NCBI GenBank assembly: GCA_964106645.2
Contig: OZ067043.1
Direction: 5' to 3' (one strand)
Source of the DNA: Podarcis pityusensis
Lineage: Eukaryota
DNA length: 64,000 nt
The notes under the pieces are model-generated. The model was not told the DNA's origin and did no database searches. It worked only from the letters and a program-made list of their open reading frames with translations. Position numbers and translations under genes: made by a program. Shown here piece after piece: positions 48,101 through 63,558 of this stretch. The stretch's first letter is position 1, and every line of letters begins with the position of its first letter.

Positions 48101-51100
48101 TATGTGAAGCAATTCCTAAACTAAATGCACCAAATCTCATCTACTCATTTGACACATAGATTATACTGCCAGGATTTCCAAGCAGGTCCTTTTTCTTTGT
48201 GATTCTACACATACCCCAAATTTTCAAGACCACCCCATCTGCAGTATGGAGGTTGCTAATGGCCAAAGGTGCTCCTTGAAATGTTGGGCAGGAAGGGGGC
48301 AACATTTCCACAACTAAATGGCTTTGGAGATGTAGCTGAAATGTTCAGCAGTGCCAGTCCAGCAAAAACAAATAAGGACATTGAGCTGGCTTTGTTTTTA
48401 CAAAGAGCCAGATGAATAATATGCAGGCTCTTGTCCCACCTCATAAGGATTCTTTCCCAGTATTGGCACAAGCAATAACTGTGTTAATGGGCTCCCCCTG
48501 CTCATCTTCTTTTTCATCAGGGTCTTCAGGCACAGAGCTGGCGCAACTGCAGCGGTTACACATGGCAGAGATGGCTCAGCTGCATGCAGAGATTGGCAGC
48601 CTGAGACATGACACAGAGAGGATGAAGCTAAGACATCCCAAGAGGGGGTCACCACTACCCCGGCTGCCACCTCCTATAGCTCCACCCCTGCCACCTCCTC
48701 CCCCTCTTCTTGGATTGCCTGACCCTACCTTTCCAGCTAGTAACATGGTTAGTGCCCCTTTAACTTGGGAAACCTCAGGCAAAAGTCATACTGAATATCT
48801 GCTTTTGGAGCGGAAATAGTATAAAAATACTTCTATAGTTTTAATAATTCAGAGCTATCATCCTGTGTGGCTGGCTCTCTCCATATCTGTGTTCACTCCA
48901 GAAAGATGCATCCAGTGGTGCATGCTCTGCTTGTTGCAAATATGCTGACCATTTTGCTCAGGGGTGAATGATTTATCTGAAGCTGTTGAGTTATATTCTT
49001 AAGAGTTTCCTTGAGGCAGCAAGCCTCATTATTCCCCCTAAGACTGATGCTGGTATTTCCTTTTTCTATTCTTTGGTAATGTAAAACAGCTCTCATATTT
49101 CTGCCTGCTATAGGACCCCATGAGAGCATCTGCCACAGCTATGAGCCAGTACTTCCTGGACCCTTCTGATGCCCTGGGACCAGCGCCATATGATCCGGCG
49201 TATGTCATTTCTATTACCTGTATTATTCTGGGTTGAGCTAGTGGGAGGGCAGCATATGTTTTTTTTTCTGTCTCATTCTTGCATGGAGTATTTGTAGACA
49301 CTGCCATGTAAAGTGAAGATGTTCATTTTTTCCATCCTAATACCATTCCTAGGGATGCATTTTGGAATCTAGCCTGTTGAGTCTTCTGGACTGCAGCCAG
49401 CTCATAGAAAATAGCTGTTGTTAAGAGTTTGGGGTGGTGGGAGATAGGCTGTATGCCTAAACCTTCCTAATTCCTGGAAGTGCCTAGAACCCCTGGAATT
49501 TCACTCAGCTTGGGGTGGCATGCAAGCTGTGTTAACTATTACATGAGTGTGACAATTATCATCTCTCTGCAGGTCTGGCTTTGTGATATTCTATGATTTT
49601 CTTTTGGGCCTGGATCCCACATTCTATCAAGTCTGCCTGGTCTCTGGCCTGTTCCGCAATGGGCAAGAGCTGGGCAAGCCCACCCCACTGCCCGTTGTCT
49701 CCTCTGATATGGGTCAATACCCACAGTATGTGACTGATGGGCAAAGAGGGTGCTGCGCCATCTTAGCAGCTAGGCAACCAGTCCCAAGGTGAGTTTCAGT
49801 GGCTTTTGCCATAACATCTCATCTCTTCTGTTCCCGGGTCATTATCTGGGCAGCCATTCCCAGTTGGCAAAGTTATTTGTTTTCATTATTTCAATGTATA
49901 TAGTGTACAGCAAGATAATGCTCCAGACAAATGCAATGATAAGTGGTAGAAGATTCCTTTCTAAAAAAACAATGCAAAGAAAACAATCTATCATGAACTG
50001 CTTTTATCCTGACCCTTTAGAAGACCCAGGGCCCTATCATCTTGGCATGGGAACCACTCACTCTGGGGATTAGTATGAGTTTCAGATTGCCATAAAATAG
50101 GCCGTTTCAGTCCAGTTTTGCACACGCCAGATTCTTGTCTGTTCTTATTTAGAGGTCATATACGTTAGTGTCATATAGAAGATAGTCTTCTTTGCCAAAC
50201 CCCCATGTGAAACATGGCTACAGTGATTTGTAGAGAAAAAGGTAGGCTTGTATGTATTACCTTTGTCTGTTCTTGCTTTTCAGAGTCCTTCCTTCAACCA
50301 CCATCACCCTCATAACTGAGCTTCAAGCATCTGGAGGCTTTGATGCTTATGGACTGGAGATCCAGAATCTGGCCCCCAGGGGGTGGGCCAAAATCAACAT
50401 CTTTGACCATCTACATCAAGTGATGTGTGGGCGCTGGAAGATCCCCATCCGAGTGCTTCCTATGAAGCCAAGCCTTACTCCAGAACAGTTGAATGGTGTG
50501 CCCCAGGTGAGGACCTTTAGCAAGGGTCAGTGCAGAGTGCCCAGAAAATTATTTCCTGACCAACATGAAGGGAGAGTGTCATGCTCGTGCTCTCAGGAGA
50601 CTCATGGTGAACCATTAACATTGGCACTTAACACTGAGCTCCTACTTTCTGCATTGTGCTGAGTGTGATTTGAGACAGATTCAATCTCATTGACTGAATA
50701 GAAACATTCCTGGAATGATGGCTGTTCCTCAGAACACCTTGGCCAGATCAAGATAAATTAGTCCAACATCGTCTTCAGTTATTTTCGTATCTGTTTTAAT
50801 CCCAACCAGACCACACCTTGTTTTTTCCTCACAGCTGGGCAAAGCAGAGCTGTACTTGCGACTAGTGAATGCAAGAGATGCTGACATGCAGTCAATGGCA
50901 GAGATTCATCCAGGCAATGCCTCCTTGTACAAATACCCTCCTACAGTGAGTTGAACTGCATGGCATTATTGTCTCTTTTGAAGTTATTTTTAACTCTTTT
51001 TCTAGTTAGCATTTCTTGAGGACAGATTCTGAAAAACAGGTTCTTTGTGTCCTCAATATTTATTTGCTGCAGAGAACCAGAATGACACCAAAAAGAAAGA

Positions 51101-60700: not shown

Positions 60701-63558
60701 TGTGTTCCATGGTGGACTATGTATTTGATGAGCCTATTGTTTGGAAAAAAATGTTAATCAAAGGGCAGAAGGAACCTTACAAAACGTTAACAGTCCATCT
60801 TACATTCAAATCAGATTAACAGAAGGGTGAGCCAAGCATCTCGCCCCATGCATCAACACACTTTGGTAGGAAATGATAGAATTCCGTAACTGTGGGCTAC
60901 AGCAAAAACAGCTTTTTGTTTCACACAGGTCTGTTGTTTCAGTGCGGGAAATAGTTCACCAGCTTGAAAGTCCTAAGAGTTTAAGCACAGATGAGGAGGT
61001 TGTCACCTGGATCCATCAGAAACTAACCCGGGTGCCAGGCAGCAGTCCACAGCCTTTCAGCCTCACCTATGTCTCCAGATACATTCCCACCTACGGCATC
61101 AAGGTGAATAGCTATCACACTCACAGAAATGCCGTTTAGCACAACATTTTATACATGGCTGGGATAGAATACTATAGAGATGGAAGTAAGCTGTGTTTAA
61201 CTCAGTAGTCACATCGATAGTAATGCTGGCTACTTATAACCAGTCTTGAGTAATTTCTGCACTTGAAAATAGTTATCAACCTTTAACCTGGTCTCTGTTG
61301 CTGTGCCTTTAGCTACATGTTGATTAACAGGCATTTATCAACTTCTGAAGACAACCACTAGTATTCTTAATTTTCTAAACAAGTTGACTTTCTCAGCTGT
61401 ATTACTTCATATTGCTAAGGACAAAAATTCCCTGCTCACAGAAAACTGGCATGTCAGAGTAATTTGAAATGGTATAGTTGAGAAACAAATTTAGTATTTA
61501 ATGTTTGTGAGCAAACTAAGCTTTGGCTGTGTGTGTACAGTGCTCTTATCCAGACTGACATCTAATCTCTGTGGTATTGCAGTTTGCATTGGACAGAGGC
61601 ATGAACTTACCATGGTCTGGCTTGACAATCGCCCAATTCTGCTTCAATCCACCTGGGGCATGTTACTTTGGGGCGCAATGGCTGAAGTATGATTACCCCA
61701 TCTTTGTTGAGGAGCTTGACAATAACAGCTACCAGCAATGGCCTGTGTGGCTTGATGGCTTCAAGGTATCACATCCTTTATTTTGTTGTTCCATCACTCT
61801 GTAAGCCACCCTTCAGTCACAGGACTCTGAGAATGGCCTACAACTAAAAAAAGATGACACTGGGTGTTCCACTCAGCAAAGGATAGGCCGTTGCCTTTCA
61901 GTAAGATGGGTCCCATGCTGTAAGGAACCAATCTGTATTTCAACACTGGTTTATCTGGTATTTTTCACAAGTAATCTGTCTTATTCAGCAGAGTCTACAG
62001 CAAAGTGGCTAAATGCCTCCTGAGCCTAGTAACCAGTTAACTAAGATGCACTGTGTGGAAGGTAACTAGGTGGAGTTTTAAGCAGAATTATTAGCTCCAG
62101 AAAAGTTCAGCAAAGTAGAAACATTCTCTCTAGTGAATTAGTATTGCTATAATTAGGCTGATTCCCTACCACCTATCCCTACTAAATCTGTAGCCTATAT
62201 TTTGATACCCTACTGGGGTTCAAACATTTTTGCTAGCAGCGAGGCTCAGGGTTCTTAATTTCTGTTCCACATAAAGGAAGTGTGTGCATTCCTTTCATAA
62301 ATCCATTGCTGCCCAATTTTTTACAGAAACATGTCATATCACCAGCATTTACTCACTGCCTTATACCAGGGGGCTCCGGGTATGTGAAATTTAATTCTGT
62401 GTTAAGGAGACCTGGCATGATTTTGAATGAGGCAGTCTGCCCATGGTGGAGTACAGTGTAAGCTTTCTTACTGATGACCATATTTATTTCCAAACTCATA
62501 TTTGTGAACCTGTACACAACAGGTGACTCAGCCTTTCCTTTCAGAACCTGCAACTTGTTTTTCAGACCTGTCCCCACAGAGTTTACCATGAATATACAGC
62601 CATCATCATTCACCTGTACCAAGGTGTGGTGAATCCTGCCCAATGTGCCTCGGGTGAAAAAGAATGCCAAGCAGCACAAAGAAGAGTCATGCTAAAAGGG
62701 GAACAGTTACATTACACTCAGAAAAGTGGGGCATGGACAGCTCTTCATGTGTTTTCCAGAGGTTACTGCAACACTGGCATTTACCAACTGCCCTTATACC
62801 AGGGGGCTCCCAGTCAGGTATAGTTAACCAACCAGCTAAAAGTTACGACATACATGCCAATTTTCTTGCAAAAACTATCAAATTCCAGCAGCTGGGCAGG
62901 GGCATGCACTTATTAGCGCGCACACACACACACACACATATATTCTGTACAATGTTTCCCTCCATCACCTGTATATCACCATTCTGTCAAGCTGAAAGTT
63001 ATCCACTTCCCCACTTTTGAGCTTTATGTGAATGCAGCATCAGTTAAGAACTGATGGCTCATCCCTACAGAATTCAGTACTTTCTGAAGTCCCTACTTGT
63101 GTACGCTTAATGCCTGCAAATATCTTAGCAATGACAAAGGGTACAAATGGCAACTAGTTCTCCCAGCTTTTGGAGGTGGTGATGGTGCAAAGCAATGAAC
63201 CAGTGCCTATAACTGCTAAGCATTCCCCACCCCATCTTTGGCTTAAGTGTCACCAGCTCTTGACCCACTTGTTTTTACACACTACTATAATTTAGTCCAA
63301 AGTCAGCAATCAGTTTCTAATTTCAAGATGTTGTTTGGGGTGTATACAAAATTAGTAAGCTTTACAATGTTACTTTGTATTGTTTTGGGAACACTTCTCA
63401 CTATTTCTCTCACTTAAGGAATCTCTTGCAGTAGTCTACTAAAAGAATGCTGCAAAGAAACAGTAGGTGGTTTGTTCTTTCCTTAACAGATCATCCTGGC
63501 TTCCTTATCTGAAGGGAAATGCAGCAGCATTATGAAGAGCATGCTCCAAAAGAAAGAG
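54790..63558 (+). CDS. Uncharacterised multi-C2-like coding region; in-frame C-terminal extension of CCDC17 or an adjacent split gene; continues beyond the window
   Basis: Exons 54790-54831, 55149-55290, 55472-55564, 56349-56556, 56664-56770, 57251-57391, 58244-58398, 58705-58825, 59619-59735, 60133-60230, 60323-60535, 60929-61103, 61583-61765, 62566-62817, 63490-63558. All GT-AG, phase-matched and stop-free (2116 nt, about 705 aa). Includes GFDLYIDGARFLPDGVTVTRV, IGWAALNVF and GYCNTGIYQLPLYQGAP. Confidence 0.88.
55732..55951. mobile_element. Tc1/mariner MITE (CAGTGGTACCT family)
   Basis: TA|CAGTGGTATCTTGGGTT...AACCCGAGGTACCACTG|TA; colinear with 9562-9802. Confidence 0.85.
57620..58130 (-). 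mobile_element. CR1 LINE ORF2 fragment
   Basis: Minus ORF with EQDLGAIV...QCTGTVRKAKSMLGITRKRTENKT...MLLYKSMV, typical of the CR1 RT C-terminal region. Confidence 0.8.

What the first reader, a model, noticed from the sequence alone, without database searches (positions are those of the whole stretch)
49573..62817. Four tandem C2-like modules share one signature across the CCDC17/extension boundary
Seen by manual alignment. M1 (in CCDC17): [12 protein letters not shown]...GWAKINIFD...[13 protein letters not shown]...AELYLRLV. M2: LGFILDRVKGAP...AAWAVLRLT...NTGTHTLTLYHGP...ATLRLHVF. M3: GFDLYIDGARFLP...GWAALNVFV...NDGAHQLRIFHNSP...ATLLVRLI. M4: GIKFALDRGMNLP...AWTALHVFS...NTGIYQLPLYQGAP. Established: the 'GW..l.lf...G...L.l..P' strand pattern marks Ca-independent C2 domains of the PI3K/DOCK/NPHP type, and coiled-coil plus tandem C2 is the architecture of ciliary and centriolar scaffolds such as RPGRIP1L, CC2D2A and CEP120. 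Inference: one ancestral multi-C2 membrane-binding ciliary protein, of which mammals keep only module 1.
Basis: partly seen in the sequence, partly recalled or inferred. Interest (0 to 1): 0.8.

Follow-up and report, generated by a model that had tools for sequence, protein, structure and literature searches.

The report
Ancient four-C2-domain form of CCDC17
This lizard gene encodes the long ancestral form of a cilia-linked protein with four related C2 domains, three of them in no protein-family database; the egg-laying mammals and marsupials checked, salmon and partly snakes each lost the back half, apparently at a break point the lizard gene already uses.

Summary
Confirmed. The window is a Podarcis lizard CCDC17 gene. 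Its exons are 99.3% identical to a public protein, and the long 1,230-1,480 aa form is already in RefSeq. All four modules fold as 8-stranded C2 sandwiches (AlphaFold pLDDT 83-90). Their best matches are AIDA, PI3K, DOCK and otoferlin C2 domains (Z 9.7-13). All six module pairs match by HMM-HMM (E 1e-6 to 1e-13; controls null). None has the calcium-binding aspartate set. Only module 1 is in Pfam. Modules 1, 3 and 4 occur across eukaryotes; every named non-animal host belongs to a flagellated group. Two corrections. (1) Loss is not mammal-specific: salmon and a second vertebrate paralog keep only M1, and snakes keep M1+M2. (2) The gene appears to run as separable halves. RNA contigs show read-through at the M1/M2 donor and a conserved upstream exon spliced into M2, but not the M1-M2 join. 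Monotreme proteins stop exactly at that donor. Membrane binding and ciliary location are inferred, not shown. The scan's two earlier notes concern this same stretch, not other DNA.

The parts
42112..42300 (+). First coding exon; N-terminal C-x2-C-x12-H-x3-C zinc-finger-like motif
   Evidence: motif conserved to sponge, Chromosphaera and protist homologs; Pfam C2H2 hits only weak, E 0.006-0.7
42672..49199 (+). Nine exons of the N-terminal/middle coiled-coil and Pro-rich region (PF28454 CCDC17_middle_coil lies in this half; exact span not mapped); approximate 5' edge
49573..50870 (+). Module M1, C2 domain = Pfam PF28455 CCDC17_C; exons 49573-49788, 50284-50506, start of 50835-50945
   Evidence: AlphaFold 8 strands; VIA Z 12.7 to AIDA-C2, 12.6 to PI3K-C2
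52090..52251 (+). Pro-rich disordered linker exon 52090-52247. Its phase-2 donor can be read through to a stop at 52249-52251 (short 693-694 aa form); AATAAA at 52240 and 52937
   Evidence: pLDDT <50; RefSeq short models end here; read-through contig in run X1; stop at the same position in monotremes
54277..54831 (+). Alternative upstream exon inside the M1/M2 intron, spliced to 55149; probably a mostly non-coding first exon of an extension-only transcript; X-box-like 14-mer at 54777-54790. 5' edge is a contig end, not a mapped start
   Evidence: joint in runs X2 and X6, two studies; 72% over 337 bp with boa, 71% over 854 bp with Elgaria; reading frame not conserved; motif 11/14 here, 12/14 in Elgaria, weak
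55201..57319 (+). Module M2, C2 domain; exons 55149-55290, 55472-55564, 56349-56556, 56664-56770, 57251-57391
   Evidence: VIA Z 13.0 to DOCK180 DHR-1; crude dN/dS about 0.3 against Elgaria and two snakes
58307..60362 (+). Module M3, C2 domain, the best conserved; exons 58244-58398, 58705-58825, 59619-59735, 60133-60230, start of 60323-60535
   Evidence: VIA Z 10.1 DOCK180, 9.9 AIDA; conservation 0.67; dN/dS 0.17
60363..61097 (+). Conserved helical linker joining M3 and M4 into one rigid unit; rest of exon 60323-60535 and exon 60929-61103
   Evidence: pTM 0.87 for M3-linker-M4-tail; linker profile hits in protists
61098..63558 (+). Module M4, C2 domain; exons 61583-61765, 62566-62817, 63490-63558; last strand beyond the window
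   Evidence: VIA Z 9.7 otoferlin C2A, 9.5 PLC-beta C2; hhalign to M3 E 9e-14

Best explanation
This is the ancestral long CCDC17: zinc finger, coiled coil, C2 (M1), disordered Pro-rich tether, C2 (M2), then a rigid C2-helical linker-C2 unit (M3-M4). The four C2 domains arose by ancient internal duplication and lack Ca2+ ligands (shown by prediction and alignment). Most likely it is a constitutive adaptor in motile cilia: the coiled coil docks it on a tip or basal-body complex, and the C2 array holds that complex against the ciliary membrane and/or partner proteins, as CCDC33 does (inferred; cilia about 0.75, direct lipid binding about 0.4). In jawed vertebrates the M1/M2 intron is a switch. 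Splicing 52247 to 55149 gives the full protein (inferred, not seen in RNA here). Read-through gives the short M1-only protein. An internal exon feeds an M2-M4 transcript. Lineages that fixed the short product lost the rest: mammals and salmon at this intron, snakes one module later.
For: Fold. Mutual homology. No Ca2+ set. Conserved order M1-M3-linker-M4 in choanoflagellate, Chromosphaera, chytrid, Cyanophora, Rhodelphis and chrysophyte; M3-M4 in a second chytrid and a green alga. Joined ORFs on 3.7-7 kb transcript-sized invertebrate contigs. Cilia link of the mammalian gene: ciliated-cell marker (10.64898/2026.03.14.711768) and DNAAF9 co-precipitate listed as a ciliary tip protein (PMC12700831). 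Join in vertebrates, indirect: strong GT donor kept in six non-mammals and lost in echidna; in-frame phase-2 acceptor in all five loci; M2 strands 1-3, upstream of the first shared ATG, under purifying selection. Switch. Mammals group with the long amniote gene, support 95. Monotreme stop is 13 residues after the DxPP box, as in lizard, snake, frog and shark short models.
Against: No contig with the 52247-55149 join in four runs (low depth, contigs show presence only). No polybasic bias: net charge -2 to +4 per module. No localisation or lipid data exist for the long form. Co-occurrence with cilia rests on about 8 named non-animal hosts, with no systematic survey. M2 is not detected in most protists, which have a 300-400 aa gap there.
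Confidence: 0.7

Rival explanations
1. In vertebrates the locus has become two genes: short CCDC17 (M1) and a separate M2-M4 gene with its own promoter. The joined RefSeq models are bridged by gene predictors.
For: Only split-type joints were seen. Run X2 has extension exons at depth 11 and no M1-exon contigs. Split models break at the same intron in Podarcis raffonei, Lacerta, Elgaria, Candoia, Xenopus laevis and Amia.
Against: Donor and in-frame acceptor are conserved. M2's first strands are conserved although lacertid split models start downstream of them. Newer Podarcis muralis and Zootoca models are joined. Any model break at a phase-2 GTGA donor gives this stop automatically.
Confidence: 0.2
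2. The C2 domains do not bind membranes. They are protein- or microtubule-binding modules of a centriolar or axonemal scaffold, like CEP120 or AIDA.
For: No Ca2+ ligands and near-neutral charge. AIDA-C2 ties for best match. CEP120's C2 domains lack Ca2+ loops and membrane enrichment (PMC5990496). C2 chains of ciliary central-pair structures are among the fold hits (9nw3, 9ijj).
Against: DOCK DHR-1 and PI3K C2, equally good matches, are lipid-binding (established knowledge). CCDC33's C2 domains are required for its function at the ciliary tip (PMC12796433). Conserved Arg/Lys sit in strand 1 and its loop in M2 and M3.
Confidence: 0.4
3. The 54277-54831 exon is not a first exon. It is the end of a long read-through 3' UTR that uses a cryptic donor, so the spliced extension RNA is a non-productive product and there is no internal promoter.
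For: Run X1 covers nearly the whole intron 52248-54831 at exon-like depth. Contigs cannot show a start. The X-box-like match is weak and equalled elsewhere in the intron.
Against: X2 holds the extension without M1 exons. The block is conserved between lacertid, anguid and snake, with a near-invariant stretch of about 35 bp beside the donor.
Confidence: 0.3

Closest known systems
CCDC17 (Pfam PF28454 CCDC17_middle_coil + PF28455 CCDC17_C)
   Same: It is the ortholog: same two Pfam families, NASP downstream in relatives, groups with monotreme and marsupial CCDC17. The long sequence is already in RefSeq for reptiles, amphibians, basal fishes and invertebrates.
   Different: Pfam covers only the mammal-type half. 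M2-M4 have no family hit, and I found no paper on their fold or on the two-part transcription.
CCDC33 / Tetrahymena C2D1 (ciliary tip, coiled coil + three C2; PMC12796433)
   Same: Coiled coil plus several C2 domains in a motile-cilia context; a ciliary-tip C2 chain (9nw3) is a fold hit at Z 9.6-10.8.
   Different: No sequence-level match to any solved chain. CCDC17 adds a zinc finger and a conserved helical M3-M4 linker.
RPGRIP1L, CC2D2A, NPHP4, CEP120 (ciliary and centriolar multi-C2 scaffolds; PMC3495828, PMC5990496)
   Same: Divergent Ca-independent C2 arrays of ancient origin; NPHP4 C2 is a language-model neighbour of M3-M4 (0.93).
   Different: CCDC17 is absent from the main text of that catalogue. 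No Pfam hit to these families. CEP120 C2 scores lower (Z 7.7-9.9) than AIDA, DOCK and PI3K.
DOCK DHR-1, PI3K-C2, AIDA-C2
   Same: Best structural matches (Z 9.4-13.0, rmsd 2.8-3.5 A), also Ca-independent.
   Different: Identity is 9-18%. Those are single domains inside enzymes or adaptors, not four tandem repeats.

Membership tests
C2 domain superfamily | Eight-stranded beta-sandwich in each module | tested here: met
   DSSP on AlphaFold models, pLDDT mostly >90 in strands; strand 3 of M2 and strands 3-4 of M4 are short
C2 domain superfamily | Structural match to solved C2 domains over most of the domain | tested here: met
   M1 Z 12.7, M2 13.0, M3 10.1, M4 9.7; the hit lists are dominated by C2-containing chains
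Classical Ca2+-dependent (PKC-type) C2 | Five acidic Ca2+ ligands in loops CBR1 and CBR3 | tested here: not met
   Few conserved loop acids: two in M3 (D843; position 906 is Asn in this lizard), one or two partly conserved in M1, M2 and M4 (loops read from the alignment, not from a superposition)
PI3K-C2 / DOCK-C2 / AIDA-C2 / NPHP-type families | Profile match above the family threshold | tested here: not met
   No Pfam hit on exons or full-length relatives, bar PI3K_C2 at E 0.16 in a sponge homolog and one precomputed PF00792 entry on Xenopus tropicalis; PDB sequence search blank
PI3K-C2 / DOCK-C2 | Ca-independent phospholipid binding | not testable with these tools
   No model coordinates to map surface charge; module net charge near neutral
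CCDC17 | PF28454 + PF28455 and N-terminal zinc-finger motif | tested here: met
   On the 99.3% identical P0178; motif in exon 42112-42300
CCDC17 | Orthology to the mammalian gene rather than to the CCDC17-like paralog; NASP synteny | tested here: met
   Quick IQ-TREE, SH-aLRT 95 for amniotes with mammals, 98 against the paralog clade; NASP-type TPR gene downstream in snake, Elgaria, Xenopus and salmon; the window itself ends before it
Ciliary coiled-coil + multi-C2 scaffolds (RPGRIP1L, CC2D2A, CEP120, CCDC33) | Occurs only in ciliated eukaryotes | tested here: inconclusive
   All named hosts belong to flagellated groups (flagellation from my own knowledge), but many hits are unnamed and no survey was possible
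Ciliary coiled-coil + multi-C2 scaffolds (RPGRIP1L, CC2D2A, CEP120, CCDC33) | Localises to transition zone, basal body or tip | not testable with these tools
   Only indirect literature on the short mammalian form (PMC12700831)

The most novel reading that the evidence does not exclude
CCDC17 is an overlooked, near-LECA motile-cilia scaffold with its own family of four C2 repeats. In jawed vertebrates its gene became a two-unit switch (intronic stop and poly(A) site, plus a conserved internal ciliary promoter). That let mammals, salmon and, one module later, snakes drop a rigid C2-C2 unit conserved for over a billion years. Mammalian motile cilia would then lack a component that most other flagellated eukaryotes keep.
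Probability: 0.35. Interest if true: 0.7.

Novelty: new member of a known kind. Interest (0 to 1): 0.5.

Why it matters
CCDC17 is used as a ciliated-cell marker but has no known mechanism. Showing that its Pfam C-terminal domain is the first of four homologous C2 domains, in an architecture shared with flagellated protists, gives a testable model: a CCDC33-like membrane or protein adaptor. It adds three unclassified C2 domains to the ciliary C2 radiation. It also warns that frog or lizard CCDC17 is not equivalent to the mammalian protein. The monotreme stop sitting on the ancestral splice donor is a clean case of truncation by fixing an existing short isoform. The sequence itself is not new: it is in RefSeq.

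Tried and rejected
No human contig or human protein was fetched or compared, so placental mammals were not examined. Pfam on single exons was blank (one search was a frame slip, corrected). The big protein search was used once, after the first Pfam call had failed and before its corrected result, because word search cannot reach full-length relatives from one exon. Complex prediction of M1 against M2-M4 gave no answer and is no evidence either way. The PDB sequence search was blank, and the Atlas had no structure for this protein. A third isoform using the acceptor at 52597 was not seen in any run. A coding role for exon 54277-54831 was rejected as the main reading: its frame differs between lizard and boa, and the in-frame ATG at 54716 is altered in run X2's species. 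Strict RFX X-box patterns found nothing. Birds: none among the listed hits, but only 120 of 336 were shown, so nothing is concluded. Three contig look-ups (alligator, leatherback, leopard gecko) had no record. The careful tree did not finish; the quick tree is cited.
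Full report
OBSERVATION. The quoted motifs all lie on one + strand chain of AG/GT exons from 49573 to 63558 with continuous phases. One exon (58244-58396) searched against 1.84 billion proteins gave 174 hits, many 1,200-1,900 aa long. The window's exons map in order onto these. The closest is P0178 (Podarcis lilfordi, 99.3%), so the window is a wall lizard, and it holds residues 1 to about 1384 of the 1454-aa protein. 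The joined model was not searched; the natural protein stood in for it. The long form is already annotated as CCDC17 in geckos, turtles, alligator, amphibians, bichir, gar and eels, and as uncharacterized in amphioxus, molluscs, cnidarians and sponge.

STRUCTURE. AlphaFold of P0178:335-1340 (74 rows, pLDDT 83.4, pTM 0.67) gives four 8-strand sandwiches, a disordered Pro-rich stretch after M1 and a helical linker between M3 and M4. M3-linker-M4-tail alone reaches pLDDT 90.4 and pTM 0.87, so it is one rigid unit. Structure searches return C2 domains: M1 AIDA Z 12.7 and PI3K 12.6, M2 DOCK180 13.0, M3 DOCK180 10.1, M4 otoferlin C2A 9.7. Profile comparisons are significant for all six module pairs (E 1.3e-6 to 9e-14, strongest M3-M4), while reversed, shuffled and linker controls are null. 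No module has the five-acid Ca2+ site, and net charges are near neutral. Pfam 38.1 has CCDC17_C for M1 only; the extension has no family and no solved relative by sequence.

DISTRIBUTION. Module profiles find M1-M3-linker-M4 in order in a choanoflagellate, Chromosphaera, a chytrid, Cyanophora, Rhodelphis and a chrysophyte, and M3-M4 in a second chytrid and a green alga. M2 is detected in animals and Chromosphaera; most others have a gap of similar size. These hosts all belong to flagellated groups (my knowledge; not a survey). The mammalian gene is a ciliated-cell marker (10.64898/2026.03.14.711768) and co-precipitates with DNAAF9, where the authors list it as a ciliary tip protein (PMC12700831). 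It is absent from the main text of the 2012 catalogue of ciliary C2 domains (PMC3495828).

LOSSES. A tree of the M1 region puts platypus, echidna and two possums with the long amniote gene (SH-aLRT 95). It separates a second, short 'CCDC17-like' paralog of sharks, bony fish, lungfish and amphibians. In echidna the next gene begins 2.2 kb after the stop, with no extension match. In possum the gap is 3.4 kb, with no DNA served. In salmon NASP is 2.5 kb away and nothing matches. Two snakes keep M1 and an intact M2 and stop at the end of the exon matching 57251-57391. In Pituophis no M3 lies before NASP; in Candoia only 3 kb beyond were seen.

THE M1/M2 INTRON. RefSeq gives lacertids both joined models (1454-1455 aa) and split ones (693-694 aa plus 689-715 aa). 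Four RNA-like runs from related species show the joints 50945-52090, 55290-55472 and 55564-56349, and a contig reading through the donor at 52247. They also show an upstream exon ending at 54831 spliced to 55149 in two studies. They never show 52247-55149. That upstream exon is 71-72% conserved with Elgaria and boa but not in frame, and carries a weak X-box-like motif. Caveats: these are contigs at low depth, 'RNA' is the tool's guess, and X1 covers most of the intron, so a long read-through UTR with a cryptic donor remains possible. The join is still likely to be used. The GT donor is kept in six non-mammals and lost in echidna, and an in-frame acceptor exists in all five loci. M2's first strands, which lacertid split models omit, are under purifying selection. 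Invertebrate transcript-sized contigs encode the joined protein. Platypus and echidna stop 13 residues after the DxPP box, exactly where read-through stops in lizards, snakes, frogs and sharks. The simplest reading is that mammals fixed an existing short isoform and then deleted the rest. For RefSeq short models this stop follows automatically from any break at the donor. The independent support is the monotremes and two lizard-like Logan transcript contigs (P0283, P0284).

MECHANISM. Shown by prediction and alignment: four homologous Ca-independent C2 domains, one on a flexible tether and two fused rigidly. Inferred: a constitutive adaptor of motile cilia that works like CCDC33, whose three C2 domains are needed at the tip (PMC12796433). 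Whether the domains bind lipid (as in DOCK and PI3K) or protein (as proposed for CEP120, PMC5990496) is open, about even. A complex prediction of M1 with M2-M4 gave no answer.

VERDICT. A real and well-supported feature. The gene model is known. The four-C2 architecture, its eukaryote-wide spread, the two-part transcription and the repeated truncation appear undescribed in the papers searched. It is a new member of the known class of coiled-coil multi-C2 ciliary scaffolds. Interest 0.5.

Noticed in passing
window 62318-62394: Decayed intronic copy of the 3' part of exon 62566-62817 and its donor (local alignment score 64), with a one-base gap; looks like a small local duplication.
   Followed up: partly
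window about 21000-39200, - strand: A kinesin-13 (KIF2C-like) gene lies head to head with CCDC17, about 3 kb upstream; same arrangement in two snakes. Tetrapods are reported to have GPBP1L1 there (PMC4082323), so squamates seem rearranged.
   Followed up: partly
window about 960-5700, + strand: Exon-like stretches that I take from memory for ARMH1 (C1orf228), a neighbour of KIF2C; not tested.
   Followed up: no
window 55730-55955: High-copy short repeat in the intron, with contig depth up to 350,000 in the runs; probably a lizard SINE or DNA-transposon relic.
   Followed up: no
window 13900-14720 (- strand) and 8475-9320 (+ strand): Broken LINE reverse-transcriptase fragments.
   Followed up: no
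P0332-P0394 (sharks, bony fish, lungfish, amphibians): A second vertebrate paralog, CCDC17-like, about 590-670 aa with M1 only; no amniote member among the listed hits.
   Followed up: partly
P0374 (Alosa), P0392 (Hypomesus): Teleost models with partial extension pieces (M2 and the start of M3; part of M2 and M4), suggesting staged decay in these fishes or incomplete models.
   Followed up: partly
window 52597-52630: Possible acceptor giving an 11-residue terminal exon after donor 52247; not seen in four RNA sets.
   Followed up: yes
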